Below, piece by piece: positions 31,701 to 62,547 of a stretch of 64,000 nucleotides of DNA; position 1 is the first letter of the stretch, and every line of letters begins with the position of its first letter. The notes beneath the pieces are model-generated. The model did not search any database and was not told the origin of the DNA. It saw nothing but the letters and a program-made list of their open reading frames with translations. The position numbers and the translations under genes are program-made. The stretch covers positions 1 through 64,000 of IMG/VR virus record IMGVR_UViG_3300034104_003795; one strand, written 5' to 3'.

Positions 31701-32009
31701 AGATTAGATTTGAATTTCACACAAGATGTTTATATCAAAGTTAAAGATACAAAACATACTTTAAGATTCACAGCCGATATCTATAACTTCACAAACTTCA
31801 TCAGCAAAGATTGGGGTGTAAACCAAACTCCAACAACTGTAACTCCACTTAACTTCGTAAGATTGGATACTGATGGAAAAACTCCGGTATTCTCATTCCC
31901 TTATTTAGATGGAAGAAACAAAGTTCCGTTTACTGATTCATTCAGAGATAACGTAGGATTTAGTTCTCGCTACCAAATTCAATTGGGTGTAAGATATATC
32001 TTTAACTAA
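28749..32009 (+). CDS. TonB-dependent receptor with N-terminal carboxypeptidase-regulatory-like domain (Oar-like)
   Basis: Signal peptide; GRYNLPNLKIGGPYSI; LDGANFNNSFGL; ISLDAIEQIQVNVSPFDV..GGSINTVTRSG; C-terminal IQLGVRYIFN. Confidence 0.92.
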   Translation: MKKIGKFLLMVVITLLSFGASAQETTSEIQGLVSDGKAGLAGVTIVATHQPTGTKYSTSSRTDGRYNLPNLKIGGPYSIHVTSIGFKAEHQDDITLLLGQSHKANFILKEASTTLKEVVVTSGQSKVFNSSRNGSQEIINRQLIERIPNVNRSWKDLVKLVPSQNNLSFGGLSSQLNNVTLDGANFNNSFGLGDGTLGGQTGAQPISLDAIEQIQVNVSPFDVKFGGFAGGSINTVTRSGKNQSFGSVYQFFKNKDLQGYKVGDVTLPKQDFTYDLKGFTAGGAIVKNKLFFFVNGEQESRMEPGTQWVASDANNTPNGINVSQAKAADLDALRKFLIEKYNYDPGAYQGYQYGSVSKRLTTKLDWNINSKNSFSLKYTLLRSSADIPASNSQSVNASNGRRPSTTSMPFYGGGYTINNNADIIIGELNTRFSNNASNKLQIGYTKLRDFRGTLTSGNFPQVDILDGNGQPFTTFGYERFTYGNVLNSDVIQLNNIFNLYKGKHEFTFGTQNSFKKYSNGFSPNYAGAFRFNSLADFYASAEGTKPAAAYDLSWSLTGDFPLVGPKNTELSLFAQDKFRVKDNLTITYGLRADYVSFADNFLYNPVVDTLSKFYDGVRLNTGLAPKNALQLSPRIGFNWDVNNDQTLQVRGGTGLFQGPPPFVWISNQASNSGMALFGSITNATGYMFNPDINAYRPTPTPGLSRAYSLNVTDPNYKFPQVWKSTLAVDKKVLGWTVTAEGTYIKNINATVFQNVALPSTGNITLSDGRTRFIKRSVYDATGTAQTSANPNIGNAIYMTNANVGYVLFGTLQVQRQFKNLAVNASYTRQTAKDGTINGSTAFTMWGARPTSTNPNNFEEGFSNNYLPHRIIGSFVYGKEFIKNTRTSIGLLYEASPNSPQSSLSYTYAGDLNNDGFNGNDLIFVPKDASQIKLTNASAVGGVADTRTQEELWNQLDAFISNNKYLSTRRGQFAERQALVLPWVHRLDLNFTQDVYIKVKDTKHTLRFTADIYNFTNFISKDWGVNQTPTTVTPLNFVRLDTDGKTPVFSFPYLDGRNKVPFTDSFRDNVGFSSRYQIQLGVRYIFN

Positions 32010-37343: not shown

Positions 37344-37649
37344 TTATATTGTGTTTAAATAATGTACCAATGATTCGCCAAAAAGTTCCATATCATGTAA
37401 TGTTGCTTGATATACAACATCTTCTATAATATCTCCAGTAGAATCATTCATAAGTTTTATATCATAGGTAAGTTCACTCCATTCATCATTTAATAAACCT
37501 TGCCTAAATATAACCAATGTTATTGTTCGTTTACCATCTTTATGTCTGGCCTGCAAAGCATAATGTTCTTTACCCGCATCGGTTCTACCAATCTGCCAAT
37601 CACCATACCATTGGTTTTGTATCTTCTTAAAATTTTCTATTGTTAGCAT
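37344..37649 (-). CDS. MLTIxN-family paralogue A1
   Basis: MLTIENFKKI..W..HYAL..LVIFR. Confidence 0.7.
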   Translation of the reverse strand: MLTIENFKKIQNQWYGDWQIGRTDAGKEHYALQARHKDGKRTITLVIFRQGLLNDEWSELTYDIKLMNDSTGDIIEDVVYQATLHDMELFGESLVHYLNTI

Positions 37650-37651
37650 AA

Positions 37652-38122
37652 TTAAAAAGGTATTACTGGATGGTATTTATCAACTATTTCTTCTACCATT
37701 CCCCAAAAGTTTTTATAATTCAAATCATGCCCTCTAAACCAACCTCTATAATCCCATTCACCTTTATCATCGTTAATATACACTTGATACATCATTTCTG
37801 GATAATATGGTACAGGTGCAACTTGAAGTTCTCTACCCAAAGTAATATATACTCTCAATTTTTTATCTTCTCTATGTACAAGTTGAAATGTATATACTTC
37901 TTCCGATTCATCCGCAGATAGAATATCCCATCCCCAAAAAATCATCGTAGTAAGTTCTTTATCGTAATTTTGTATATGTAATTTTTTCTTTTTCATATTT
38001 GGTTCTTTTGGTGTAACTGTTACTATAACCTTTCCATAGTTTTTAGGATTGATTGGTTTACTATATCCCTTTCTAATAAGTTGGTTAGGTCTAAATCCAC
38101 CTTTTAATTTATTTATTCTCAT
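37652..38122 (-). CDS. MLTIxN-family paralogue A2 (family domain starts at Met 37996)
   Basis: LHIQNYDK..WDI..VYTF..ITLGR. Confidence 0.65.
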   Translation of the reverse strand: MRINKLKGGFRPNQLIRKGYSKPINPKNYGKVIVTVTPKEPNMKKKKLHIQNYDKELTTMIFWGWDILSADESEEVYTFQLVHREDKKLRVYITLGRELQVAPVPYYPEMMYQVYINDDKGEWDYRGWFRGHDLNYKNFWGMVEEIVDKYHPVIPF

Positions 38123-38123
38123 A

Positions 38124-38432
38124 TTACATTGATGCCTTTAAGCAACTACTAAACGTTCTCATCACATTTGTAAATTTTCCAAACCATTTCGCAGTTATAA
38201 TATGAATTGGACAATTAGGATAGTTTAATCGGTATTCCCATGCCTTCTCAATATCATTATAATGCCCAATCTTACTTACCTCAATCCAAATATAACGGTG
38301 TACACCGGAACTATCATCTCTGAATTGAAATCTATAATTTGTATCCGTTTCAATAGCCTCAGTACAAATAAATCTTTCTTTATGAAACATCGCTGTTACT
38401 ATCTTATCGTAATTTTGTATTATTAGTTTCAT
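38124..38432 (-). CDS. MLTIxN-family paralogue A3
   Basis: MKLIIQNYDK..NYRF..EYRL. Confidence 0.65.
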   Translation of the reverse strand: MKLIIQNYDKIVTAMFHKERFICTEAIETDTNYRFQFRDDSSGVHRYIWIEVSKIGHYNDIEKAWEYRLNYPNCPIHIITAKWFGKFTNVMRTFSSCLKASM

Positions 38433-38436
38433 TCAT

Positions 38437-38745
38437 CTATTTTTTATGTTCTGATTGAATATAACATTCCATCATCAACCAAAATTGCTCCTTATCTTTA
38501 AATTGAGAAAGTGGTAGTTGCCCTTTCCAAATTATATTCGTATAAGAACGATACATAACACTAACCTCAACTTTACCATTTTTAATTTCTCTCCCTAATT
38601 GTACCGCAGCATGTGTAGTATTACCATCAATACATTTCAATTTAAATGTATAATACTGATTGGTTTCTTGTGCAAAATATATTACCCAATTTTGTATTAG
38701 ATAATTCTTTAAATCTGCGTAATTACTAATATCTAACTTTTTCAT
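38437..38745 (-). CDS. MLTIxN-family paralogue A4
   Basis: LDISNY..WVI..YYTF..VQLGR. Confidence 0.65.
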   Translation of the reverse strand: MKKLDISNYADLKNYLIQNWVIYFAQETNQYYTFKLKCIDGNTTHAAVQLGREIKNGKVEVSVMYRSYTNIIWKGQLPLSQFKDKEQFWLMMECYIQSEHKK

Positions 38746-38753
38746 TTATTATA

Positions 38754-39056
38754 TTATCTTTGTAACCCACCCATTATTTCGGTGAATTTGTTCACTAAAT
38801 TATTTATATCTTTTATATAGTCAAGCGTTACCGCATATCCTATTGGTTTATCATCTAATGTAAATTTATATTCTCCACTACTTTCAGCAATTCTATTAAG
38901 AGATAATTTCCTTACATCATCTATTTTACCTGTTAAAGGGTTTTTTCTTAACAATACGAAGTGATACCAATTGTCAGTTTCACTAATACTATCCACCAAC
39001 CAATGTTTGTCAAACGCATATTGGTTTAATTTATTTACATTTAATATTGTTAGCAT
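38754..39056 (-). CDS. MLTIxN-family paralogue A5
   Basis: MLTILNVNKL..WLV..WYHF..LSLNR..EYKF. Confidence 0.7.
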   Translation of the reverse strand: MLTILNVNKLNQYAFDKHWLVDSISETDNWYHFVLLRKNPLTGKIDDVRKLSLNRIAESSGEYKFTLDDKPIGYAVTLDYIKDINNLVNKFTEIMGGLQR

Positions 39057-39057
39057 G

Positions 39058-39333
39058 TTATATTAATTCATCTATTAAAAATCTTACAAACTCATCTCTA
39101 TCTCCCATACACTCTATTGGTAGATAATGTTCTTTTTGTGTTTCTAAACAATAGACATGATAATCACCATGCTTTGTTTTCTTCCTATCAATACAAAGGT
39201 TAAACATATCAAAAGGTGAACCATTGTGTATTGTCTTTATATAGTAGATATCATCTCCTATTGACAAGTTATGTATCTTCCAATGGCCTATATACTTACC
39301 AGCCAATGTATTTATGTTTTGTATTGTTAGCAT
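39058..39333 (-). CDS. MLTIxN-family paralogue A6
   Basis: MLTIQNINTL..WKI..IYYI..LCIDR..DYHV. Confidence 0.7.
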   Translation of the reverse strand: MLTIQNINTLAGKYIGHWKIHNLSIGDDIYYIKTIHNGSPFDMFNLCIDRKKTKHGDYHVYCLETQKEHYLPIECMGDRDEFVRFLIDELI

Positions 39334-39334
39334 T

Positions 39335-39655
39335 TTATATCTTTTCTTTGTTCATTAAAATATATTCCAATTGGTTAATCATATTATCTTTATCGGCTAT
39401 GAAATCTGCGGTGACACATACATCGGTTCGTTTTGAATCAAATATGAAGAAGTACGATAAGTTAGGTGAACCAACACCTCTAATACCAGTTCTCTCCAAC
39501 ATAATCTTATGTCTTGTTGTGAATCCACTCCCATCCCAATCCTTAACCAATTCAAATATGTAAGTATCGGGTCTACCTTCATATATCAGTTGTATTGTCC
39601 AACCATCTGCCAAAGGTCTCCCTTCTAATTTCAATATGTTTTCTATTGTTAGCAT
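39335..39655 (-). CDS. MLTIxN-family paralogue A7
   Basis: MLTIENILKL..WTI..TYIF..IMLER. Confidence 0.7.
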   Translation of the reverse strand: MLTIENILKLEGRPLADGWTIQLIYEGRPDTYIFELVKDWDGSGFTTRHKIMLERTGIRGVGSPNLSYFFIFDSKRTDVCVTADFIADKDNMINQLEYILMNKEKI

Positions 39656-39656
39656 C

Positions 39657-40037
39657 TTAAATTAAATTTTGGTCTTTAGCCCATCTCATTATCACCTTGG
39701 TTGCGTACATTTCTAAATTGTTTTGGAATAGTTTCATATCCTTTATTTGTGATATCTTTAACCAATCATCACTATCCATTAAATTATTTTCCATTTGGTA
39801 TATTCCTTTTTCATCCGGCGTTCTACGAAGATAGATACAAAGTGGTACATCATAATCCGAAACGGCTTTATATTCAAATCGGTATGATTCATCCGTCTCA
39901 CCTGTTACTGCAGTTACATCACCGGGAAACTCAATAACTCGCTCACACTCCCATTCTAATAATTCAGAAGGGACGTACAAGTTTTGAAGTTTTATTTTAG
40001 TACCTACTAATTTTTCTATGTTCTTTATTGTTATCAT
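39657..40037 (-). CDS. MLTIxN-family paralogue A8
   Basis: MITIKNIEKL..WEC..SYRF..IYLRR..IYQM. Confidence 0.7.
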   Translation of the reverse strand: MITIKNIEKLVGTKIKLQNLYVPSELLEWECERVIEFPGDVTAVTGETDESYRFEYKAVSDYDVPLCIYLRRTPDEKGIYQMENNLMDSDDWLKISQIKDMKLFQNNLEMYATKVIMRWAKDQNLI

Positions 40038-40405
40038 CCGAATACTAAATTTTTAATATCATCATATTGTTTAATACTAGCACCATTCAAACTATTTTTT
40101 ACAATATACACACCAAACCTTCTCAACGAGCCCATCATTACTCTTTTAGAATTAAAGGAATTTGACCTAACTCTTAAAGGATACGCCATATCTTTGGAAT
40201 GATTAACTAAATAACAACCCCAACCCAATTCTTTTGGATGGGCTGAACTTCTCATAATGATAAGATAACAAATGTGGTTCTCTATACCATCGTTGTACAT
40301 AAACTCAATAGCATACAAATCTCTTTGAGCAACACAATATATTACCGATATCTTATCATCGGTCCATCCACCTAACTTTTCAACACCATCAATAGTTAAT
40401 CTCAT
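40034..40405 (-). CDS. MLTIxN-family paralogue A9 (divergent)
   Basis: MRLTIDGVEKL..LYAI..LIIMR. Confidence 0.6.
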   Translation of the reverse strand: MRLTIDGVEKLGGWTDDKISVIYCVAQRDLYAIEFMYNDGIENHICYLIIMRSSAHPKELGWGCYLVNHSKDMAYPLRVRSNSFNSKRVMMGSLRRFGVYIVKNSLNGASIKQYDDIKNLVFG

Positions 40406-40414
40406 ATTATACGT

Positions 40415-40507
40415 TTAGCAGGATATCAATAACATTAATAAGAGTATAAGCAAATACACTCCTAACATTTTCATTGTAGTCCAATCGTTTTTCTTTTTAG
40501 TTTTCAT
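40415..40507 (-). CDS. 30-aa peptide that is essentially a lipoprotein signal ending at the lipobox Cys
   Basis: MKTKKKNDWTTMKMLGVYLLILLLMLLISC-stop. Confidence 0.4.
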   Translation of the reverse strand: MKTKKKNDWTTMKMLGVYLLILLLMLLISC

Positions 40508-40856
40508 CCCAATACTTTTTACCTTTACGAACAACCTCATGCATACAAGCGATGAAGTATCCAAATTTCTTTATATCATCTACATCCAAATACTCAATCG
40601 TTACACCATGCAATCCCATCCAAAACAATTCGTACTTACCAGATACGTTTGGGTTTCGGTAAAGATAAATTTTGAAACTATCTTCCCATTGTTTATATGG
40701 ATTATTGGTTTTGGTGATGAAAGGTATTGCCGGAAAATGGAATACATACGCACTCCCATTAACTATCTCACCTTTCTCTACCGTTATCTTTTCAATAGTA
40801 CGATTGTGGAAATGGTGACCGGTAAGTTTGTTGATACCTTCTATGTTTAAGACCAT
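40497..40856 (-). CDS. MLTIxN-family paralogue A10
   Basis: MVLNIEGINKL..AYVF..IYLYR..KYEL. Confidence 0.65.
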   Translation of the reverse strand: MVLNIEGINKLTGHHFHNRTIEKITVEKGEIVNGSAYVFHFPAIPFITKTNNPYKQWEDSFKIYLYRNPNVSGKYELFWMGLHGVTIEYLDVDDIKKFGYFIACMHEVVRKGKKYWDEN

Positions 40857-41986: not shown

Positions 41987-42310
41987 TTACTTTGTGTTTA
42001 ATGCGGGTTTGTGTTTCTTAACCAATTCCATCTCTCTAATGTGAGCGGCCTCTTTACCTCTTACTACATCTAATACCGATACTTCATATACCAATTCTAA
42101 ATCATCAATGTAGTTGAACATATCCATATACAATTTCCAATCCCAATTTTCCCTTCTCGCTCTACTAAAATGTTTTTGTAACCGAACCTTTGCGGAACGA
42201 AGGAACGCCCGACCGGTTGAAGCCGTAATACCAATATATTCGTTACCATTGAAGGTATTTGTAATAAGGTATATAATATGATTCCTATCTGTACGTTTCT
42301 TCCTACTCAT
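41987..42310 (-). CDS. GIY-YIG endonuclease-family protein (start MSRKKRTDRNH)
   Basis: HIIYLITNTFNGNEYIGIT..RLQKH..REMELV..LNT; promoter at 42332-42363. Confidence 0.8.
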   Translation of the reverse strand: MSRKKRTDRNHIIYLITNTFNGNEYIGITASTGRAFLRSAKVRLQKHFSRARRENWDWKLYMDMFNYIDDLELVYEVSVLDVVRGKEAAHIREMELVKKHKPALNTK

Positions 42311-43098
42311 ATCTAACTTAACTTTTATACCTAAAATTACGAAAATTAATTGAGACCACCAAATTCTACCTAAAAGTTCTCGATTGGAAATCAACCCTTT
42401 ATAGATATATTTTAACCCCATACATAAGTCATTGACCGTCAACCAAGTATATATTAACCCCTTTCCGTTCCATTTTAACCCTATGAACCCCTAAACCATA
42501 CCTTTACCCTACCCATCCAAAATAACCCCAAGAAACCCCCTCGAAATGATTCATATATACGGCTATACTGTACAACCCACTGGTACCCCAATCCTAACCT
42601 ATTGATTGTCAATGAGTTATAACCAATTGATAATGAAGGGGTTATATATAGGGAATATCCACCATACCAATAAGGACGGATACAATAAAGACAGGTACAA
42701 TAGTAATAAAGACTATATACCATTAGGGGTAATATATAAAAATCTCGTATAGCGAAAAACTTGGGCTCGATACGAGAAGGGGTTAGGGGGCCCTCTAATA
42801 AAAAAATATTTTCTACGGTTCCAAGAAATTCAGTCCCCTACAGTCCCTATGGCGCCTACGTTCCAGAGGATTGGTATGCATGTATATATGTGTGTCCTCT
42901 ACAATCCTTATGGCGCCTACGTTGCGTGAGATTGTGTTTTTGATTGAAGTAAAATCTTTTTTGTTAAGGTAGTCCGTCCATGTGGGTAAGTTATAGACAC
43001 AAGAAAGGGGACCCGATTCCCAGTCAGTCCCCTCAGTCAACTTGCTCATTTAATAAACGTCAAATCACCAAACACTCCTCATTCAAGAGGATAATATT

Positions 43099-44282
43099 TT
43101 ATTTATTCATATAGTCCAATCCTATGTAGATATCGAACCATTGATTTATAACTCTATACTTTAGCCCCATTCCTTTACTATCATAATCTGTATAATCAGG
43201 TCCAGCTACCGCCTTCACTTCATTATATAGTGCTTCCGCATCTTCTTTGTGTATGGCACATAGGGCGTGTATTTTTGCTTTAATACTAGCTTCGTGTCTC
43301 ATACCTACTTCCCATACCGAGTGGCTATCTGACATCATATAGGACCAATCATGCTCATTCACTAACTGCATTAGGTCACTTCTCATTGTATTACTTATAC
43401 TCATATACTTAATTTTTTATAATAAATAAAATGTTACTGTCTCAGCTTTCCGCCAGGGTATATCATTTTGGGTACCGGGTCTATATGCATTACCCAGCAC
43501 AGCCTTTCGGTTACTATGTCTACCACGTGGACGGACACGGCCACCACCACAGGTTGCAGATAGTAACTTCTTTATAGATAATATCTGGATTTCGGACTCA
43601 AACTTTACAGTCAATAATTTTTCACTCATTGTATAAGGGGTTTATGAATTAATAAGAATAAGCCTTTGTACTAGCTTCTTCCATCTCTGCCAAATAGGCT
43701 TTACCATTGGCTGTACCCCAATATGATTTAGGGATACTATTATCGTATGGATTTGTACGCACAATACGTTCAATCACTTCCGCTTCCAACTCATTCGAGC
43801 GTAGAAAACCATTCACCAATTTTTCCATAAGGTCAGAACGTGTCTCACGTCTGTCCAACTTATTGTATGCGGCCAAGGCCATAACTAATGTTTTCAACTC
43901 TTTATTTGAGAAAGCCGATACTAACAGGTCACAATTTTGATTATACATATAGATAATTTAAGGGGTTTAAAAATTACTTCAAAAGGTATTTAGAACACAT
44001 ACCGAAACCAGCAGACTGTAAGTCCGATTTGATTTCCTTATGGAACTTTTTAGGGAACTTACCCATTGAAACCGGATACTCTCTCAAGATTGAATTGATC
44101 TTGGTTGTTTCAGATTTGAAAAGGGAAAGGAACTCTCTAGCCTCATTGAAGGCTTTACGAGTCTTACATTGGATACGGTGGGTATTACCCAAGAAGTCAG
44201 TATATTCTACTGATACGTTAAAACGGGGGTTTTCACTCATTTTAGAGGCTGAGAAACTCTTAAAGGGATTTTGCGTATTCAT
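43099..44282 (-). CDS. four small early hypothetical CDSs (43099-43404; 43417-43629; 43649-43948; 43974-44282)
   Basis: Downstream of host-type promoter 44306-44337. Confidence 0.55.
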
Positions 44283-44305: not shown

Positions 44306-44640
44306 TAAAGATAGGGGTATTTTCCGAGCTGGCCAAACTTTTTGGGACTTATTTTAAAAATTCTTGCTTGAGAATCAATGACTTATGTAAGGGGTTGAAT
44401 ATCAATGACTTATAAAACGTTGGTTTTCAATGAGTTACGATTCAGTATAGATTAGGGGTATTTCACCCAGCCCCTACACAGATTCCAGAAGACCTGTCCA
44501 GAAAATGTGGATAACTTGATAAAAAACGGGTAAAACTACACAGAAAAATGTTCAAAATATAATATGTAGCATGTTAGTGTGTTAATTAGTATATTAACCC
44601 CACCAGTCCATCTGGGCCCAGGTCCCGCGGGACTTGTGGT
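44306..44640. promoter_or_regulatory. non-coding control region: promoter, three dyads, DnaA-box match, GC palindromes
   Basis: Dyads 44361-44437; TGTGGATAA 44506-44514; CTGGGCCCAG and GTCCCGCGGGAC 44612-44633. Confidence 0.55.
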
Positions 44641-46297: not shown

Positions 46298-47143
46298 TTA
46301 CTTCACCATACCAATACGCTTCCAACTACCATTCCATTCCTCACCATTCAGGTACCAATTCCAATTCTTTTGTTTGATGTGTACGCCGGGTATACCATTC
46401 AGACGTTCTTTTGTAGTGTTTGAGGACCATCCAGCGTTTGTTATACTCAATACTCCTAGCTCGTCAATAGTTGCAATAGTATTACCATGCAATCTGAGCT
46501 TATATATACCATAGGACTCTTCTACACTCATATTAGATTTGCGGAAGGTCTCTTTACTTAAAAACTTGTCAATAGATTCTTTTGTGATTTTTCTCATAAT
46601 AAGGGGTTTAACGGATTACTTAACAATTTCAACCATACTCAAAGGTACGTTAAATGTACCAATACCAAATCGGACTTTACAACGGGTACGATTGATTTCA
46701 ATTACTGAACCAGTCGAACCTTGTACTCTGGGTGAATTCACTTTAACGTTGTCACCAACTCTTAATTGGTTTTTAACTTCATACGCCCTATCTAATCGAG
46801 ATTCTTTTAATAGGGATACTACATAGGAATTCAACAACTTCAAGTCAAGTGAACTCATTTTTTGAATTTCTGCACGCATTTTTGAACTAATCATATAATA
46901 AGGGGTTTAAATTTTAATACTTAATGTGAACACCATTCTGGTCATCCACAACTTTTGGATACCCGATGTTCGGCTCTCTAATAACAAAAGCAACGAAAAC
47001 GATACCAAACCAAAGGATTGTCTTTAACATAGGGGTTATTTAGAAGTTTTGAAATAGTACTCATAAACGGTTTTACCTAAAACATATCCAAAAAGTGAAA
47101 CTCCACTTATAAGGACGAACTCTAAAATTGTAATGTGTGTCAT
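46298..47143 (-). CDS. four early CDSs (46298-46597; 46616-46894 KOW-like; 46914-47030 and 47036-47143 TM micro-proteins not in track)
   Basis: LRVGDNVKV..GSVIEINRTRCKV; hand-translated 38-aa and 35-aa hydrophobic peptides. Confidence 0.55.
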
Positions 47144-50198: not shown

Positions 50199-50525
50199 TT
50201 ATTGATTTACTATATTTTTTATATGAGTGTCCAAGCAAAAAGTAAAACTACTTATGGTCCTCATATACTCTATATCCCATGCCGAACGTCCATGAAAGCT
50301 TTGTTTTACTAGTCCGGTCTCCATTACATACCCACCTATTGTTTTTACTCTATTCAATTTTATAGTCAACTCATCACGCCTAAAACCCCCGATTGTCCAA
50401 TAACCTACCCGTTTATGGATTACAAATATATAGTTTTGTTCACCTATAAACATTTCACCTATCCGCCATTCGGGTGTACCGGCAAACTTACTATTGAGTA
50501 TGTTTATGTTTTCTATTGTTAGCAT
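50199..50525 (-). CDS. MLTIxN-family paralogue B1
   Basis: MLTIENINIL..WRI..NYIF..IKLNR..GYVM. Confidence 0.7.
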   Translation of the reverse strand: MLTIENINILNSKFAGTPEWRIGEMFIGEQNYIFVIHKRVGYWTIGGFRRDELTIKLNRVKTIGGYVMETGLVKQSFHGRSAWDIEYMRTISSFTFCLDTHIKNIVNQ

Positions 50526-50526
50526 A

Positions 50527-50835
50527 CTATTCTTTTAACATTTTATCAATTAAGTTTCCTATAAAATACGGCGTTATTTGATGCATACTCAACCATCTAT
50601 TTACTTTACTTTGGTCAAAATCTTTATATAACCTATAAACGGGTTCGTTTCTGCCACTTACATATTGGCTCTCTCTATTCAAATAAAATACATTTTGTAC
50701 CTTACCGTTTACAGAAACAGCAAATGCATATACATCCTTATAAACATCGGTTGTTTCTATCGCTTCACTTATATACCATATGTTAATAGATGAACCCACA
50801 TTTATTATTTTATCTATGTTTTGTATTGTTAGCAT
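50527..50835 (-). CDS. MLTIxN-family paralogue B2
   Basis: MLTIQNIDKI..WYI..VYAF..FYLNR..VYRL. Confidence 0.7.
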   Translation of the reverse strand: MLTIQNIDKIINVGSSINIWYISEAIETTDVYKDVYAFAVSVNGKVQNVFYLNRESQYVSGRNEPVYRLYKDFDQSKVNRWLSMHQITPYFIGNLIDKMLKE

Positions 50836-51152
50836 AGTATATATTTGTTTACTAAAAATTCTATTGAGCTTACAAACTGTCTCATGTCCGATATATCCTT
50901 TGTTCTTAAATATATTCTACTCGTAGGATTACTATTATCATACATCGCGTAGGTTGTTTCCATATTAGGACCAAATACGTCCGAAGTTCTAAGTAAAACT
51001 AATAACTCGTCAGATTTTGATTTACGCGGACATCTTAAATGTATTTGATATGCTCTTTCATATTGAGTAGTATTTCTTATATAATATTCTACAACACGAT
51101 TCTTAACTATTGGTACATCTAATATCTTATATGTATTTTCTATTGTTAGCAT
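50829..51152 (-). CDS. MLTIxN-family paralogue B3 (start reassigned to 51152)
   Basis: MLTIENTYKI..AYQI..VLLR..TYAM. Confidence 0.7.
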   Translation of the reverse strand: MLTIENTYKILDVPIVKNRVVEYYIRNTTQYERAYQIHLRCPRKSKSDELLVLLRTSDVFGPNMETTYAMYDNSNPTSRIYLRTKDISDMRQFVSSIEFLVNKYILC

Positions 51153-51162
51153 ATTATTTGTT

Positions 51163-51486
51163 TTAATTACTGAAACTATGCAATTGACCACCCAATATAC
51201 CAACAAACATTTTCAATTGTAAGTAACCTTTTGTTAGTATTGTATAACCATTATCTTGGTCATTATACATTTTCCACTCACCTAACGTACTACTAAATTC
51301 ATTATATCTTAATAGTTTAAAGTTTACATACTTTGGATGCTTTACGCCAAATGTAGTACCATACTCAAATCTTACTTTAATAATATAATCATGCTTTTGT
51401 TCCTCTATACTCATTACTACCCAATGTGCATGTGGTGTATGTATTTTTTTTCCTACTATCTTTTGTATGTTTTTTATTTTTAGCAT
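51163..51486 (-). CDS. MLTIxN-family paralogue B4
   Basis: MLKIKNIQKI..WVV..DYII..FKLLR. Confidence 0.7.
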   Translation of the reverse strand: MLKIKNIQKIVGKKIHTPHAHWVVMSIEEQKHDYIIKVRFEYGTTFGVKHPKYVNFKLLRYNEFSSTLGEWKMYNDQDNGYTILTKGYLQLKMFVGILGGQLHSFSN

Positions 51487-51496
51487 ATATTATTTT

Positions 51497-51820
51497 TTAT
51501 ATATCGTATGAGGTATCAATCATTTCAGTCATTCGTTTTATCAATAACCTCTTATCACTTATAGTTTCAATTGGTATGTATGTTTTAATCTTATACATTC
51601 TTTGCATACCCGGCCCACCTGCTGATATTCCAAATTCATATCCAATTCCATGTAGGTTTTGTTTATTCAAAGCAAATATTTCTTTTGGGCCTTTTCTATT
51701 TTCAATTAAGATTAGGTATTCATCGGTGTCATCTATAATTTTGTCCACTACCCAATACATACCCATCTTATCATAAAACGAATCACTTATTAACCGTCCT
51801 CTATTTTCTATTGTGAGCAT
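51497..51820 (-). CDS. MLTIxN-family paralogue B5
   Basis: MLTIENRGRL..WVV..EYLI..FALNK..GYEF. Confidence 0.7.
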   Translation of the reverse strand: MLTIENRGRLISDSFYDKMGMYWVVDKIIDDTDEYLILIENRKGPKEIFALNKQNLHGIGYEFGISAGGPGMQRMYKIKTYIPIETISDKRLLIKRMTEMIDTSYDI

Positions 51821-52127
51821 ATATCATTCCAGTTTGTATGTGTAACTCTAATATGAAGTTTTTCATTGTAAGGTTTTCCGGCGTTACATAAACATTTTGT
51901 TTTAGTTTTGCCGATGTCATTTCATATCCCCTACTATTCCTTATAGTTCGCATCAATTTATATACAATACCATCGTTTATACTTGCCACATTGTTTTCCA
52001 TCAAAGGAAATACCCCAAAACTATAATGGTCATAATATGCTCTTGCGATACCAATTATAAACTTCCGTCCGCTACTCAATTGGAATTCCTTACCGTCTAT
52101 ATTTTGTATGTTTTCTATTGTCAACAT
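51801..52127 (-). CDS. MLTIxN-family paralogue B6
   Basis: MLTIENIQNI..HYSF..YKLMR..GYEM. Confidence 0.7.
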   Translation of the reverse strand: MLTIENIQNIDGKEFQLSSGRKFIIGIARAYYDHYSFGVFPLMENNVASINDGIVYKLMRTIRNSRGYEMTSAKLKQNVYVTPENLTMKNFILELHIQTGMIYAHNRK

Positions 52128-52730
52128 TCATTCCGTTTATTAGGTCTTTTAAAATAACATTCCAATTATCCGCATTGTCCATTACTACTCTTTGATATTG
52201 CTTTAATATCGTATCCCTTTGCTCCTTTGTTAATTCTACGTCTAATTCTTGCTCTATTCCTTTGATATCGTCTATTGTAACATTCATACGATTTATTTAT
52301 TTAGATATTGCTTTACTAATTATGTCCACAATCCTATTCAACCGCCATTCACTCTTTTTTTCTCTTATTGTTTTCGGTTCGTCATCCTTTGTATTGTTAT
52401 ATACATTGACGGATGTATTGTATTGACTTATTAAGGATTGATAATAGATTTGATGTAAGTGATGCGGGATGTTTGTAAAATCAGCTTCAACAGTTACAGG
52501 CATTTTAGTACCTGTTCCGTATATTTGTATTGAAGTTTTGATTTGTACTTTACCATTACCCTTCATTGTAAGGTGTCTACTATCCGTTGAAATGTTTATA
52601 CTCATCCGAAACTATTTAATACTTTTTTAATTACTCTTTTTACCATTCGTTGTGCCACAAATAATGCAATTAGTGCACCAACTCCGGCTCCTATTAAGAA
52701 GCCCCAAATAAATTGAAATTCTATACTCAT
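52090..52730 (-). CDS. three interspersed non-family CDSs (52090-52287; 52297-52605; 52602-52730 TM peptide)
   Basis: ORFs inside array B. Confidence 0.5.
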
Positions 52731-52735
52731 ATTTT

Positions 52736-53044
52736 TTATTTTAAAGATTCTAACATATCTTTTATCAAATCAGTCACATATACAGTGCCTAACTTCAAAT
52801 CCGGTTTATTTAATATCCTTCTAATTGGTATTCCACTTCCCGATTGATTAGACCAAAACCATAATTCATAAAGTGCCGAATCACTCTTACCTATTGCGGT
52901 TCGTTCTAAATTAACTTGCAATCGTAGGCCATTGGATTTTCTTAATTCAATTAGGTATGCACTATCCAATGTTACTACTTTACCTATTCTCCATTCACCT
53001 ACATCCTGTTTGTAAAGTTTTTCTATGTTTACTATTGTTAGCAT
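52736..53044 (-). CDS. MLTIxN-family paralogue B7
   Basis: MLTIVNIEKL..WRI..AYLI..VNLER..LYEL. Confidence 0.7.
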   Translation of the reverse strand: MLTIVNIEKLYKQDVGEWRIGKVVTLDSAYLIELRKSNGLRLQVNLERTAIGKSDSALYELWFWSNQSGSGIPIRRILNKPDLKLGTVYVTDLIKDMLESLK

Positions 53045-53045
53045 A

Positions 53046-53342
53046 CTAAATAAATGATTCTAAATGATTACTGAATATATCAATATTTTTCATATCGTCT
53101 CTGTGTATATACTTTTTTTCATTTCCACATTCTAATTTGTATTGGTGTCCAAGTTTAAACGGTGAAAAACTTCTGTCCAAAACTATTTTCTTGTCCCAAC
53201 CATTTTCAGTTTGCTCAATAAAAATTACATAGTGATTCAAATGTGGTCTTATTGAAGTTACAACCCATTCCATTGGACCGGCACTTCCGCTACCATGCAA
53301 TATAGTACCTAATAACTTTTTTTCGTTTTCTATTGTTAGCAT
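53046..53342 (-). CDS. MLTIxN-family paralogue B8
   Basis: MLTIENEKKL..WVV..HYVI..IVLDR..QYKL. Confidence 0.7.
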   Translation of the reverse strand: MLTIENEKKLLGTILHGSGSAGPMEWVVTSIRPHLNHYVIFIEQTENGWDKKIVLDRSFSPFKLGHQYKLECGNEKKYIHRDDMKNIDIFSNHLESFI

Positions 53343-53343
53343 C

Positions 53344-53706
53344 TTAATAAGTGTTTGGTAGCATATATCTTAATACATCAATAAATTTATCCATTGTGTC
53401 TATATCGGTACAATATCCACGTTGTACTTGTCCATAACAAAACAATTCATATGTATTTTCATGTTGAACTCTATAAAAACTTAACTTAGCTTCCTCAATT
53501 CTTGCACGAGTCATAGAATAGTATTGCTGATTAGGTGAACTTATAACAGGCACTTGCGTTTGGAATTGAAATACATATGTAATTTCGTCATCCATCGTTA
53601 CATTGACGTTTGTTACACACCAAATCAAATTACCGGTTGCACTTGGTATAATTGTTTTTAATAACTTTTCAGGATTTTTTAATATCATTTTATTTGTTAT
53701 TATCAT
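53344..53706 (-). CDS. MLTIxN-family paralogue B9 (divergent)
   Basis: MILKNPEKL..WCV..TYVF..LSFYR..TYEL. Confidence 0.6.
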   Translation of the reverse strand: MIITNKMILKNPEKLLKTIIPSATGNLIWCVTNVNVTMDDEITYVFQFQTQVPVISSPNQQYYSMTRARIEEAKLSFYRVQHENTYELFCYGQVQRGYCTDIDTMDKFIDVLRYMLPNTY

Positions 53707-57829: not shown

Positions 57830-57866
57830 CAAATATACAAAAAAGTCTTGGAATTACCAAGACTTT
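57830..57866 (-). promoter_or_regulatory. host-type promoter whose -33 box overlaps a terminator stem
   Basis: CTTGG-N19-TATATTTG; AAAGTCTTGG-AATTA-CCAAGACTTT. Confidence 0.7.
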
Positions 57867-58808: not shown

Positions 58809-59772
58809 TTACTTTGTTTTTTTAGTGTACTTACGTTTTGGTTTACTTTGCTCATCTAATATTTTTTGAGCTTCCTTCAATTCCTCTTTATCAACTATAC
58901 CACCTTTATCCGATGTTATATAGCTGTAAAGTGCTAATCCACCCCATACAATCAATAACAAAAATCCAATACCTGCTAATATGTTTGATACGGTATCGGC
59001 CTTTGTAAGACCAGGATAAATTACGAATTCTAAAATCAAAAATATCGTAATGATATTAAAGATTTGCGTTTTGTACTTTTTTAAAAAATCTATCATTTTA
59101 TTTTATGTTTTATTTTACAAATATACGAAATTATTTTGAATATACCAAATTTATTTAAGAATCTTATTAACTAACTTATTCCACTCTTGCACTTCAATCT
59201 TATCGGCGTTATACATTTCAAACTCAAATTCATCAACGTTGGCCGGTACTACTAATATGTGATAATCATCTTTAATATCGTCTTTAAACATACTATCCCT
59301 AACTTGTCTAATTTCGGTACTGCTCATAGCTTGTGGTACTCTAATTACAAATATAGGTTTTGCTTTTGTAGAAAACATCATTGGTTGCTGATTTAATTGA
59401 GCTACCATTTGTTGTGCTATTTGTGTTGGATTCATATTAAGGTATTAAATGTCTTACTAATATTGTTAATGAAATCACTATCCATATCGTATTGAATGCA
59501 ATCAATGTAGGTAAATCCTTTCTCATTGATGCCCAAATTAACAAAGAGGATGTAATCAATGTTAAGAAATGAAATTGCCAAATCTCAATGCCAAATATTA
59601 AACCTGGAATGATAATGATTGCTTTGGCAAACCATGCAAAGAATTCAATCACATTATAATCTGTCCAATAATTTTTGTCCAAGAACATTTTATAACGTTT
59701 GAATATTTTTTTAATTCCAATTCCTAAATACAAAGCGAATAGGAATACAATATATGTGATTATGTATTTCAT
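58809..59772 (-). CDS. three CDSs (58809-59096 two-TM; 59151-59435; 59437-59772 multi-TM)
   Basis: Hydrophobic segments; promoter at 59118-59149. Confidence 0.55.
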
Positions 59773-61846: not shown

Positions 61847-62547
61847 TTACATTTTTTGATTAATAATTTCAGCCAAACTTTTTAATACTTTAAAAAATAA
61901 TTCAGGTGTTTTGAGTGCACCATTATTAACTTCTACCTTACCATTATGCCCTTCATTGGTCATAGCCGTTATTTTATATGTTGGTACTATTTCAGTATCA
62001 TATTCAATGCTAAATACAACATGCGGCGGAACAAGATAGTTTGTACCTTTGTTTTCAAATTTAGCTAATACAACTGCTCCCCAATTACCGTTTGATGAAC
62101 CTACTTTATCCAAAGTATTTACACTCTCAACTTTATATACAGCTTCATTTGCATGGGCTATTGGAAAATTAAACTCACTTCCTTTTATTTTTTCTATACC
62201 TACTATCATAATAATTTATTTATTAGGGTTACTACATAAGTTTTAAAGTAATCCTTTTTTCTAAAATGAACTTTACTAACATAATCTTCTATTAATGCCG
62301 GCGTAGATTCACCTTTTTTATAAACACAAACCTTATTCATTTTGTTTATATTATCCGCGAATATACCTACTGAATATTTCACATTTGAAACAGGAGCAAC
62401 TACTCTTTTTATATCAAAGTATTCAATCAGTTCCGGCTCACTACTTGTACGAATAATATTATTAGGGGCTATCACAAACACATCACCATTCTTAGCAAAG
62501 AGTTCGGAACGATATAATTTTTCAAAATTTTCTATTTTCTTAACCAT
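61847..62547 (-). CDS. two ~115-aa hypothetical CDSs (61847-62209; 62206-62547), possible distant MLTIxN relatives
   Basis: MIVGIEKI; MVKKIENFEKL. Confidence 0.5.

What the first reader, a model, noticed from the sequence alone, without database searches (positions are those of the whole stretch)
50199..53706. Array B: second cluster of nine MLTIxN paralogues about 10 kb away
Seen: nine more members with the same W / YxF / LxR / YxL scaffold, interrupted by three unrelated small genes (52090-52730). Within the window the family reaches about 19 copies, a very large paralogue expansion for a phage. Two separate clusters, one on each side of the 41-49 kb control/early region, imply repeated duplication or cassette-like insertion. 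Inference: an accordion-type locus under diversifying selection.
Basis: partly seen in the sequence, partly recalled or inferred. Interest (0 to 1): 0.85.

Follow-up and report, generated by a model that had tools for sequence, protein, structure and literature searches.

The report
Cassette-shuffled paralogue array in jumbo phage
A 274-kb uncultured phage, probably of Bacteroidota, carries two tandem arrays (19 genes) of an undescribed 100-residue protein family whose genes are gained and lost one at a time by recombination inside a conserved first-seven-codon DNA block, which looks like a shuffled repertoire of host-binding proteins rather than a recent "accordion".

Summary
Nine intact minus-strand genes (50199-53706), split by three unrelated small genes, belong to the same family as the ten genes at 37344-40856. 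A profile built from array A alone recovers B1-B8. B9 needs a deeper profile (E 1.3e-7) and folds the same way.

The family has about 475 clusters at 50% identity. All hits came from metagenomic or viral contigs, and none has a Pfam, PHROG, NCBIfam, PADLOC or PDB match. AlphaFold gives a confident model (pLDDT 93): a six-strand meander plus a C-terminal helix, with no Foldseek match.

The "accordion under diversifying selection" reading is only partly supported:
- Copy number at this syntenic site ranges from 3 to 15 across related phages, and near-identical strains differ by single-gene indels.
- There are no recent duplicates. The best in-genome paralogue is 23-41% identical (one 15-residue stretch, 67%), against 28-87% for the closest gene in other phages.
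- Orthologues evolve under purifying selection (median omega 0.14-0.30).

New finding: the first 21 nt (ATG CTA ACA ATA nAA AAY ATA) are conserved down to synonymous codons, and every indel breakpoint lies inside this block.

Best reading: a phage multigene family of variable-surface binders, shuffled as cassettes. The function is inferred, not shown.

The parts
50199..50525 (-). B1, family member (108 aa); 5' block at 50505-50525
   Evidence: A-only HMM E 1.8e-8. Starts ATGCTAACAATAGAAAACATA. 66 orthologue clusters at 64-92% identity.
50527..50835 (-). B2, family member (102 aa); present or absent between strains
   Evidence: A-only HMM E 2e-7. Absent from L003, L004, L005, L006 and L008, with the breakpoint inside the 5' block. 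80% orthologue in L021.
50829..51152 (-). B3, family member (107 aa); the modelled protein
   Evidence: A-only HMM E 3.7e-7. AlphaFold pLDDT 93, pTM 0.83. Identical protein found on 20 contigs.
51163..51486 (-). B4, family member (107 aa), with an apparently chimeric 5' block
   Evidence: A-only HMM E 1.7e-9. Its 5' block ATGCTAAAAATAAAAAAC reads like a join of the N2 and B4 blocks of L003. Omega 1.19 against L010.
51497..51820 (-). B5, family member (107 aa)
   Evidence: A-only HMM E 1.3e-4. Overlaps B6 by 20 nt.
51801..52127 (-). B6, family member (108 aa)
   Evidence: A-only HMM E 8.4e-6. Its 5' block variant ATGTTG travels with the upstream flank, not with the gene body.
52090..52287 (-). 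X1, unrelated 65-aa gene inside the array; missing in L004
   Evidence: Family HMM at noise. hhalign probability 1.2%. No X1 homologue in L004.
52297..52605 (-). X2, unrelated 102-aa gene; a conserved resident of the array
   Evidence: hhalign probability 0.4%. 89% homologue inside the arrays of L013 and L020, 64% in L056.
52602..52730 (-). X3, unrelated 42-aa hydrophobic peptide
   Evidence: Family HMM at noise. Weak YtxH-like transmembrane hit, below the Pfam cut-off.
52736..53044 (-). B7, family member (102 aa)
   Evidence: A-only HMM E 5.5e-9.
53046..53342 (-). B8, family member (98 aa)
   Evidence: A-only HMM E 8e-9. 57% orthologue with a GTG start in the distant syntenic locus L031.
53344..53706 (-). 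B9, divergent member (114 aa from the ATG at 53688); 5' block degenerate
   Evidence: A-only HMM E 0.12, leave-one-out profile E 1.3e-7. AlphaFold gives the same topology, pLDDT 84.
37344..40856 (-). Array A: ten further members (A1-A10) of the same family
   Evidence: B-only HMM finds eight at E <= 3e-4, A4 at 0.007 and A9 at noise. A9 reaches 8.5e-5 with the leave-one-out profile.

Best explanation
What is shown. Array B and array A are the two loci of a phage-specific multigene family. Each gene encodes a roughly 100-residue cytoplasmic protein with one common fold: an N-terminal segment and short helix, a six-strand antiparallel meander, and a C-terminal helix. All conserved residues lie in an alternating pattern in the strands, in the N-terminal segment and in the helix. 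The alternate strand positions and the hairpin loops are close to maximally variable and carry indels. The genes sit end to end on one strand with no spacers. Their only shared DNA is the first ~21 nt (ATG CTA ACA ATA nAA AAY ATA), which is conserved down to synonymous codons. The points at which strains differ by whole genes fall inside that block.

What is inferred.
1. Homologous recombination between the 5' blocks of neighbouring or allelic genes deletes, inserts or swaps exactly one gene in frame. The array therefore behaves as a recombinase-free cassette rack drawing on a pool shared by co-circulating phages.
2. The conserved residues form the hydrophobic core on one face of the sheet, and the proteins are non-enzymatic binders whose specificity lies in the variable sheet face and loops.
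3. Each paralogue targets a different host protein, most likely a defence or takeover target.
4. The genes are transcribed as part of a long polycistronic unit from upstream host-type promoters.

Rough probabilities: real family and fold 0.95; cassette turnover by recombination at the 5' block 0.8; binder or host-interaction role 0.45. The confidence given for this explanation as a whole (0.45) is that of its weakest part, the function.
For: Family and fold
- Family membership.
- 267 close clusters and 475 clusters at 50% identity, nearly all 90-160 aa stand-alone proteins without annotation.
- AlphaFold pLDDT 93 for B3 and 84 for B9, with the same topology.
- Conservation map: M1, L2, T3, I4, N6, K9, L10, W23, V25, Y35, F37, L39, I51, L53, R55, Y68, L70, I87, D89, F93 and L97 are conserved. 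The alternate strand positions have entropy 3.5-4.0 bits. Loops 17-21, 41-49 and 60-65 are gappy. pI ranges from 4.7 to 9.6, so there is no common charge and no conserved polar cluster that would suggest a catalytic site.

5' block
- In 115 members from 10 contigs, CTA is 75 of 96 Leu codons (window background 11%), ACA 77 of 79 Thr (44%) and ATA 97 of 99 Ile (39%).
- ATGCTAACAATA with at most 1 mismatch occurs 13 times in the window, 12 of them at family starts, against 1.0 expected.

Breakpoints
- The L003/L004 B3|B1 junction has the window's B3|B2 upstream flank, then the block, then the B1 body.
- The window B5|B4 junction has L003's B5|N2 flank, then the B4 body.
- The window's X1|B6 junction has the same upstream flank and 21-nt block as L003's X1|N1 junction, then the B6 body. 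In L003 both N1 and B6 start with that identical 21-nt block.
- The TTG/CTA/CTT variants of codon 2 follow the upstream flank, which places the crossover inside the block.

Distribution and context
- Turnover at the syntenic site: 3 to 15 members.
- A pair of arrays about 10-17 kb apart recurs in other contigs: 13+15, 9+9, 5+5, 3+7.
- Phage-restricted on present evidence. All 12 exact 20-mer hits in IMG/VR lie in family arrays. None of the 8 hits in 185,579 bacterial species genomes encodes a member.
- Bacteroidota-type promoters (TTTG-N17-23-TAnnTTTG) are enriched: 18 against 6.2 expected. None with the full pattern lies in either array.
- No terminator-like site lies in array B. One weak candidate (7-pair stem, poor T tail) lies inside A9 at 40363-40344.
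Against: - No experiment, expression data or interaction partner exists. The binder or anti-defence role rests on anatomy and analogy only.
- Orthologues are under purifying selection and are not significantly faster than their neighbours. This argues against an ongoing arms race at the gene-wide level.
- The synonymous conservation of the 5' block could serve translation or RNA-level regulation rather than recombination. Recombination there may be a by-product of conservation.
- The loci used for the codon counts were partly found with the motif itself, one member per locus, which is an ascertainment bias.
- The nearest upstream promoter-like site (57830-57841) is about 4 kb away, and a terminator-like hairpin (56644-56624) lies between it and the array. 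Timing of expression is therefore unknown.
Confidence: 0.45

Rival explanations
1. Packaged or ejected internal proteins. MLTIxN would be an N-terminal targeting tag, like the capsid targeting sequence of T-even internal proteins. The paralogues would be loaded into the head and injected with the DNA to block host nucleases.
For: - The N-terminus is by far the most conserved part of the protein and of the DNA.
- T-even internal proteins are a diverse set of anti-restriction proteins that share only a conserved targeting sequence (PMC3012670).
- The locus is polymorphic between strains.
Against: - Here the whole body is homologous, not only the leader.
- AlphaFold places residues 1-10 within the fold at pLDDT 94.
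- Position 5 is variable (E/K/Q/I), so no conserved protease site follows the motif.
- In the A2 subfamily the motif is internal, behind a conserved 30-45 aa extension.
- The genes sit among small genes and DNA-metabolism genes. No virion gene was recognised in the window.
Confidence: 0.12
2. A true genomic accordion. Recent tandem amplification of one gene under strong positive selection, followed by divergence, as with poxvirus K3L.
For: Tandem head-to-tail layout. Copy number differs between relatives.
Against: - No pair of in-genome copies exceeds 41% identity over more than 20 aa.
- 16 of the 19 members have an orthologue at 76-100% in the close relative, and most have one at 40-87% in more distant phages, far closer than any in-genome paralogue. 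The paralogues therefore predate the divergence of these phages.
- The tree is a saturated star.
- Orthologue omega is mostly 0.03-0.5.
Confidence: 0.05
3. The 5' block is mainly an RNA-level signal, for example a shared translational operator or initiation context for SD-less Bacteroidota mRNAs. It would co-regulate all members, and recombination at it would be incidental.
For: - Synonymous sites are as conserved as non-synonymous ones over codons 2-7.
- No Shine-Dalgarno-like sequence precedes the genes.
- The block directly follows the ATG.
Against: - Predicted local structure around family starts is no weaker than around 79 other gene starts (median MFE -0.7 against -1.0 kcal/mol, p = 0.17).
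- The block does not occur at any non-family gene start.
- There is no Rfam match.
- This reading is compatible with the best explanation rather than exclusive of it.
Confidence: 0.25
4. Immunity or antitoxin-like proteins. These would resemble the tandem arrays of SUKH-type immunity genes, and would protect the infected cell from polymorphic toxins or from superinfecting phages.
For: - Tandem arrays of small, divergent, single-domain paralogues are typical of immunity-gene arrays, and such families were recruited by DNA viruses (PMC3113570).
- Large aquatic phages predicted to infect Bacteroidota are reported to be rich in antitoxin genes (PMC12619734).
Against: - No hit to any SUKH or Imm Pfam model, or to PADLOC.
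- No member was found in bacterial genomes by the motif scan.
- No toxin gene was recognised nearby.
Confidence: 0.1

Closest known systems
PeSL-mediated modular shuffling in the hyperplastic regions of T4-type phages (PMC2839356, PMC4122927)
   Same: Small non-essential genes of unknown function are clustered together. Closely related phages differ by insertion, deletion and replacement of single genes. The breakpoints fall in a short conserved sequence repeated between the genes.
   Different: PeSLs are intergenic promoter-plus-terminator cassettes flanking unrelated ORFans. Here there is no intergenic space, and no promoter or credible terminator in the arrays. The repeated element is the first seven codons of the genes themselves, and the shuffled genes are all homologous.
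T-even internal protein (IP) loci with a conserved capsid targeting sequence (PMC3012670; Repoila et al. 1994, cited there but not readable here)
   Same: Diverse small proteins share a strongly conserved N-terminal leader, and the locus is polymorphic between related phages. A role in countering host defence is established for IPI*.
   Different: IP bodies are unrelated to each other and the leader is cleaved off. Here the bodies share one fold, the motif is part of the predicted fold, no cleavage site is conserved, and packaging is untested.
Multigene families of large eukaryotic DNA viruses (ASFV MGF families, poxvirus host-range families and the K3L accordion) - from my own knowledge, not tested here
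   Same: Tandem arrays of divergent paralogues in a large viral genome, with copy number varying between isolates. The presumed role is host interaction.
   Different: Different viruses and hosts, with no sequence or fold relationship. No recent amplification is seen here.
Immunity-gene arrays of polymorphic toxin systems (SUKH and others; PMC3113570) and integron-like orphan immunity arrays of Bacteroidales (the latter from memory)
   Same: Head-to-tail arrays of small divergent paralogues, with conserved sequence at gene boundaries. Occurrence in Bacteroidota-associated elements.
   Different: No homology to SUKH or Imm families. No recombinase gene was recognised among the neighbours scanned. 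The family was found only on viral contigs.

Membership tests
Genomic accordion (poxvirus K3L type) | Recently amplified, near-identical tandem copies | tested here: not met
   Best in-genome paralogue match is 23-41% identity over 20-122 aa (one 15-aa stretch 67%), 18-36 bits. Star tree with tip branches of about 3.8 substitutions per site.
Genomic accordion (poxvirus K3L type) | Copy number varies between close relatives | tested here: met
   B2, N1, N2, N3 and X1 are present or absent between strains sharing 80-100% identical genes. The syntenic site holds 3-15 members.
Genomic accordion (poxvirus K3L type) | Positive selection on the amplified gene | tested here: not met
   Pairwise omega medians 0.14-0.30. 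Not different from neighbouring genes (p = 0.11). One pair reaches 1.19. Site models were not run.
T-even internal proteins / capsid targeting sequence | Only the N-terminal leader is conserved; bodies are unrelated | tested here: not met
   Bodies are homologous over their full length and share one predicted fold.
T-even internal proteins / capsid targeting sequence | Conserved prohead-protease cleavage site after the leader | tested here: not met
   Position 5 is E/K/Q/I and no conserved acidic P1 residue follows the motif. In the A2 subfamily the motif is internal.
T-even internal proteins / capsid targeting sequence | Protein present inside the virion | not testable with these tools
   Needs virion proteomics, and no cultured relative exists in INPHARED.
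PeSL mobile regulatory cassettes (T4-type phages) | Intergenic early promoter plus stem-loop terminator flanking each module | tested here: not met
   Genes abut or overlap. No full Bacteroidota-type promoter in either array, no terminator-like hairpin in array B, and one weak candidate inside A9.
PeSL mobile regulatory cassettes (T4-type phages) | Indel and replacement breakpoints lie in the repeated conserved element | tested here: met
   All junctions examined switch partner within the 21-nt 5' block.
SUKH / Imm immunity families | Significant match to a SUKH or Imm profile | tested here: not met
   No such Pfam hit for the 9 array-B proteins or for the 141 family sequences of alignment A2. 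No PADLOC hit.
Integron-type cassette array | Adjacent site-specific recombinase and attC-like imperfect inverted repeats at cassette ends | tested here: inconclusive
   No recombinase domain among the 20 neighbouring proteins scanned with Pfam. Only a sub-threshold GIY-YIG hit at 41987-42442. attC-like inverted repeats were not specifically searched for, and there is no spacer in which they could lie.
Any curated protein family or solved fold | Sequence or structure match | tested here: not met
   Pfam, PHROGs, NCBIfam, PADLOC and PDB sequence profile all give nothing. Foldseek best E 0.56 (PDB) and 0.1 (BFVD), with TM at most 0.47. The ESM Atlas gives only unnamed clusters below 0.7.

The most novel reading that the evidence does not exclude
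The synonymously conserved first seven codons are a selected, in-frame recombination joint. Under this reading the two arrays form a recombinase-free, integron-like cassette system. A clade of large Bacteroidota phages would use it to exchange members of a new-fold, variable-surface binder family, a population-level repertoire of host or defence inhibitors.
Probability: 0.3. Interest if true: 0.85.

Novelty: new variant of a known kind. Interest (0 to 1): 0.7.

Why it matters
Paralogue families of 19 to at least 28 copies are rare in phages. This family is unannotated, has no detectable structural relative, and marks a clade of large (90-274 kb) uncultured phages that probably infect Bacteroidota.

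The locus shows how gene-by-gene turnover can happen without intergenic repeats or a recombinase. A 21-nt block inside the coding sequence acts as the joint, so every exchange stays in frame. This extends the PeSL and internal-protein precedents from T4-type phages to a different mechanism and a different host phylum.

If the proteins are target-specific inhibitors, the arrays would be a ready catalogue of probes for Bacteroidota defence or housekeeping proteins. The scaffold, with its conserved core, variable sheet face and variable loops, would also be a natural small binder framework.

The data also correct the attractive accordion reading. The plasticity is real, but the copies are old and mostly under purifying selection.

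Tried and rejected
- Family searches: Pfam, PHROGs, NCBIfam and PADLOC scans of the members gave nothing.
- Structure searches: the PDB sequence profile, three Foldseek searches and the ESM Atlas gave no credible relative.
- Cultured phages: blastn and tblastn against INPHARED phages gave no match, so no cultured relative carries the family.
The 5' DNA block was used as the probe instead.
- Bacterial genomes: the motif scan gave 8 hits, all chance, none encoding a member.
- Phylogeny of the 19 to ask whether A and B interleave: saturated and unresolved.
- Sigma-70 consensus scan: fewer sites than in shuffles, so uninformative for this host type. It was replaced by the Bacteroidota -33/-7 pattern.
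- Rfam on 36-56 kb: nothing.
- Local RNA folding around family starts against other gene starts: no difference.
- Candidate extra members at 61847-62209 and 62206-62547 (N-termini MIVGIEKIKG and MVKKIENFEKL) were rejected, with hhalign probability 16% and 5.5%.
- X1 and X2 as cryptic members were rejected.
- Polo-box or other beta6-alpha folds: they top the PDB list, but with TM 0.24 and rmsd 13 Å, so rejected.
- Assignment to the published 'moraphage' lineage was considered but could not be tested. That paper does not mention such arrays.
- All nine ORFs are intact, so no read-through of stops was needed.

Full report
**What is there**

Coordinates 50199-53706 hold twelve tightly packed minus-strand ORFs. 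Nine of them are about 100 aa and begin MLTI(E/Q/V)N or a variant:
- B1 50199-50525
- B2 50527-50835
- B3 50829-51152
- B4 51163-51486
- B5 51497-51820
- B6 51801-52127
- B7 52736-53044
- B8 53046-53342
- B9 53344-53688 (or -53706)

Three others interrupt them: X1 52090-52287, X2 52297-52605 and X3 52602-52730. Ten similar genes form array A at 37344-40856. All nine B ORFs are intact, so no read-through of stops was needed.

**Is it more than chance?**

- An HMM built from array A alone, searched against all 557 six-frame ORFs of at least 40 aa in the window, returns B1-B8 immediately after the A genes (E 1.7e-9 to 1.3e-4). B9 sits at noise level (E 0.12).
- The reciprocal B-only HMM recovers eight A genes at E <= 3e-4, A4 at 0.007 and A9 at noise.
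- With a leave-one-out profile of 140 family sequences, B9 scores E 1.3e-7 and A9 8.5e-5. The next ORF scores 0.02.
- An AlphaFold model of B9 has the family topology.
- X1-X3 score at noise against the family HMMs, and X1 and X2 are unrelated by profile comparison.

The window therefore holds exactly 19 members. Two ORFs at 61.8-62.5 kb resemble the family only at their first ten residues and fail hhalign.

**Where the window comes from**

The window is positions 1-64000 of a 273,997-bp metagenomic contig, JGI 3300034104 Ga0335031_0000010, listed in IMG/VR as UViG_3300034104_003795.

The genome has the following features:
- It is 31% G+C and has no tRNA in the window.
- It encodes a helicase, ligase, thymidylate synthase, PhoH, UvdE, APRT, Cpn10, a cyclophilin and a Band-7 protein.

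A Bacteroidota host is inferred from four observations:
- The nearest helicases are from crAss-like, Bacteroides and Cellulophaga phages, at 37% identity.
- The phage carries a SusC-like TonB-dependent receptor.
- No Shine-Dalgarno motif precedes the family genes.
- The Bacteroidota promoter pattern TTTG-N17-23-TAnnTTTG is enriched three-fold, 18 against 6.2 expected. It includes a sharp subclass ending in TTCGTATATTTG.

**The family**

- A profile search of 5.8 billion clusters gave 267 hits. A search of 1.84 billion representatives at 50% identity gave 475 hits at E <= 1e-3. Nearly all are stand-alone proteins of 90-160 aa, and none is named.
- Nothing matches in Pfam, PHROGs, NCBIfam, PADLOC or PDB sequences.
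- AlphaFold with a 141-sequence alignment gives a confident model of B3 (pLDDT 93, pTM 0.83). Residues 1-6 are extended, then a short helix at 7-10, six antiparallel strands between 14 and 83, and a C-terminal helix at 84-104.
- Foldseek finds no relative in the PDB or BFVD. The best E-values are 0.56 and 0.1, and TM is at most 0.47.

The conservation map is informative.
- Conserved positions are M1, L2, T3, I4, N6, K9, L10, W23-x-V25, Y35-x-F37-x-L39, I51-x-L53-x-R55, Y68-x-L70, and I87, D89, F93, L97 in the helix.
- I read this as one face of the sheet packing against the helix and the N-terminal segment.
- The alternate strand positions have near-maximal entropy (3.5-4.0 bits), and the hairpin loops carry indels.
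- pI ranges from 4.7 to 9.6.
- I see no conserved polar cluster that would suggest catalysis. The design is that of a stable core presenting a variable surface.

**The new observation: a conserved 5' DNA block**

Paralogues are only 14-28% identical as proteins. Even so, the first 21 nt of most members read ATG CTA ACA ATA nAA AAY ATA.

| Codon | Use in 115 members from 10 contigs | Background in the window |
|---|---|---|
| CTA (Leu) | 75 of 96 | 11% |
| ACA (Thr) | 77 of 79 | 44% |
| ATA (Ile, codon 4) | 97 of 99 | 39% |
| ATA (Ile, codon 7) | 63 of 67 | 39% |

- The bias holds in every locus examined.
- ATGCTAACAATA with at most one mismatch occurs 13 times in the window, 12 of them at family starts, against 1.0 expected.
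- Protein constraint alone cannot explain conservation at synonymous sites.
- One caveat applies. Most external loci were retrieved with this motif, which guarantees one matching member per locus. The other 4-15 members of each locus were not selected for.

**How the array changes**

Contigs that share identical or near-identical genes differ by whole genes.

| Contigs | Gene order at the array |
|---|---|
| window, L002 | B9 B8 B7 X3 X2 X1 B6 B5 B4 B3 B2 B1 |
| L003, L005 | insert N1 before B6 and N2 before B4; lack B2 |
| L004 | additionally lacks X1 and has N3 |

L007 is a 1.9-kb fragment that matches the window over B5-B1, but a B7-like fragment (41% identity) rather than B6 lies upstream of B5.

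At every junction the upstream flank of one arrangement continues, through the 5' block, into the body of a different gene.
- The L003/L004 B3|B1 junction carries the window's B3|B2 flank.
- The window's B5|B4 junction carries L003's B5|N2 flank.
- The window's B4 block (ATGCTAAAAATAAAAAAC) looks like a chimera of the N2 and B4 blocks.
- Codon-2 variants (TTG, CTA, CTT) stay with the upstream flank rather than with the gene.

The crossover therefore lies inside the block. The block is the only sequence that neighbouring genes share, so homologous recombination between blocks is the simplest mechanism, and it yields in-frame, unit-precise gain, loss or replacement. The enzymes involved are unknown. 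A sub-threshold GIY-YIG-like gene sits between the arrays at 41987-42442.

Allele mosaicism points to exchange among co-circulating genomes. B3 is 100% identical to L003 but 79% to L010. B2 is 99% identical to L010 but absent from L003.

**Deeper time**

- The same syntenic site, downstream of Cpn10 and PPIase, holds 3 members in L031, 5 in L013 and L020, 7 in L056, 9 in the window and L010, 10 in L003, 11 in L004 and 15 in L014.
- X2 is a conserved resident of the array.
- At least 32 further contigs carry the family, 31 of them in IMG/VR and many 90-250 kb long. They hold 227 members in the fetched DNA, with up to 15 in one array and at least 28 in one contig.
- A pair of arrays about 10-17 kb apart recurs, with member counts of 13+15, 9+9, 5+5 and 3+7.
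- In 185,579 bacterial species genomes the 20-mer occurs 8 times, never in a family gene.

**Testing the accordion and diversifying-selection reading**

- No recent duplicates exist. For each of the 19 genes the best in-genome paralogue match is 23-41% identity over 20-122 aa (one 15-residue stretch at 67%), scoring 18-36 bits.
- Sixteen of the 19 have an orthologue at 76-100% in the close relative 3300032326_001208. The closest gene in the other 31 contigs is 28-87% identical.
- The tree is a saturated star. A and B labels are no more clustered than shuffled labels, and B as one clade is not rejected (AU p = 0.063). The interleaving question therefore stays open.
- Pairwise omega for B orthologues has medians of 0.19, 0.30 and 0.14 against three relatives. 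The 33 neighbouring non-family genes give 0.10 (p = 0.11). Only B4 against L010 exceeds 1.
- The plasticity is real, but it is turnover of old, individually conserved cassettes, not amplification.

**Expression context (inferred)**

- No full Bacteroidota-type promoter lies in either array. No terminator-like hairpin lies in array B, and one weak candidate lies inside A9. Rfam finds nothing.
- The nearest upstream candidates on the coding strand are a hairpin at 57866-57842 followed at once by TTTGTATATTTG (57841-57830), and the strong promoter at 59118-59149. A weaker hairpin lies at 56644-56624.
- The arrays are probably read as parts of long polycistronic units. Timing is unknown.
- Local RNA structure at family starts does not differ from that at other gene starts.

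**Most likely mechanism**

My best account is a phage multigene family of small non-enzymatic binders. Each paralogue would have its own target in the host, most plausibly a defence or takeover target. The repertoire would be maintained and re-assorted through recombination at the coding 5' block.

- Shown: the family, the predicted fold, the codon-level block, the breakpoints, the copy-number range, and restriction to viral contigs in the searches made.
- Inferred: the recombination pathway, the exposed variable face, the binder role, and the timing of expression.

Rivals:
- Packaged internal proteins with an N-terminal tag, by analogy with T4 IP and its targeting sequence (PMC3012670). This is weakened by the homologous bodies, the buried-looking motif, the lack of a cleavage site, and the internal motif in the A2 subfamily.
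- An RNA-level role for the block. This is not exclusive of the best account.
- Immunity-like proteins (PMC3113570). There is no profile support.
- A classical accordion. This is largely refuted.

**Comparison with what is known**

- The closest mechanism is PeSL-mediated modular shuffling in T4-type hyperplastic regions (PMC2839356, PMC4122927). The logic of breakpoints in a repeated element is the same, but here the element is coding, not a promoter-terminator cassette, and the shuffled genes are paralogues.
- The T-even IP loci share the conserved-leader idea, but not the homologous bodies.
- Multigene families of large eukaryotic DNA viruses are the nearest conceptual analogue. This comparison rests on my own knowledge.
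- A recently described lineage of large aquatic phages predicted to infect Bacteroidota may be related. I could not test this, and that paper reports no such arrays (PMC12619734).

**Verdict**

It is a new variant of a known kind, phage hyperplastic loci shuffled at conserved elements, built on an undescribed protein family. Interest is 0.7.

Noticed in passing
window 28749-32009 (+): The phage encodes a 1086-aa SusC/RagA-like TonB-dependent receptor (CarboxypepD_reg + Plug + 22-strand barrel). It lies on the opposite strand to most genes, and an 87% homologue occurs in a related contig (L045). Phage-borne TonB receptors have been reported for Lak phages (bioRxiv 10.64898/2026.10.24.761521).
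   Followed up: partly
window 13551, 17845, 20798, 36798, 45329, 45493, 48409, 59118 (-); 28521, 32043 (+): These sites form a sharp promoter class, TTTGGT...(T/A)TCGTATATTTG, matching the Bacteroidota -33/-7 consensus. The general pattern occurs 18 times against 6.2 expected. This supports a Bacteroidota host and marks the transcription units read by the host polymerase.
   Followed up: partly
window 43634-43642, 43959-43967, 44388-44396, 46600-46608, 46899-46907 (-): AACCCCTTA occurs exactly five times, all on the coding strand within 43.6-46.9 kb. Four sit 2-10 nt before a gene start and one sits about 100 nt upstream of the nearest gene. Its role is unknown. It is absent from the arrays.
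   Followed up: no
window 57866-57830 (-): A 10-bp-stem hairpin is followed immediately by TTTGTATATTTG (a -7 box with 1 mismatch). This is a terminator-plus-promoter composite reminiscent of T4-type PeSLs, about 4 kb upstream of array B.
   Followed up: no
window 41987-42442 (-): A 151-aa ORF between the two arrays gives weak GIY-YIG/SegE hits (E 1.5e-3, below the Pfam cut-off). A 79% homologue lies next to an array in L012. It may be a homing-type nuclease that could stimulate local recombination.
   Followed up: no
window 37652-38122 (-) (A2) and P0057, P0179, P0240, P0142: One subfamily carries a conserved 30-45 aa N-terminal extension with an IITSTPxGxNxFYDxY-like motif. From memory this resembles a terminase ATPase motif. 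The family's MLTIxN equivalent is internal in these proteins.
   Followed up: no
window 61847-62209 and 62206-62547 (-): Two adjacent ORFs of about 115 aa have N-termini (MIVGIEKIKG, MVKKIENFEKL) that echo the family start. They are not detectably homologous (hhalign probability 16% and 5.5%).
   Followed up: yes
window 42450-43100: This stretch has no credible ORF and higher G+C than its surroundings. It contains a 41-nt direct repeat (42833-42873 and 42894-42934, 80% identical). Rfam and ARAGORN find nothing. It may be a non-coding RNA or a replication or control element.
   Followed up: no
L012 + L014 (IMGVR_UViG_3300025392_000640), L022, L119: Other large viral contigs carry far bigger arrays of the same family: 13+15 members in two clusters 10 kb apart, and runs of 12-15 members elsewhere.
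   Followed up: partly
B1 orthologues (P0005, P0012, P0019 and about 60 more): B1 has 66 distinct 90%-identity clusters at 64-92% identity in public metagenomes. Their variation is concentrated after residue 43, and residues 1-40 are almost invariant. This suits a site-model selection test, which was not run because the DNA was not fetched.
   Followed up: partly
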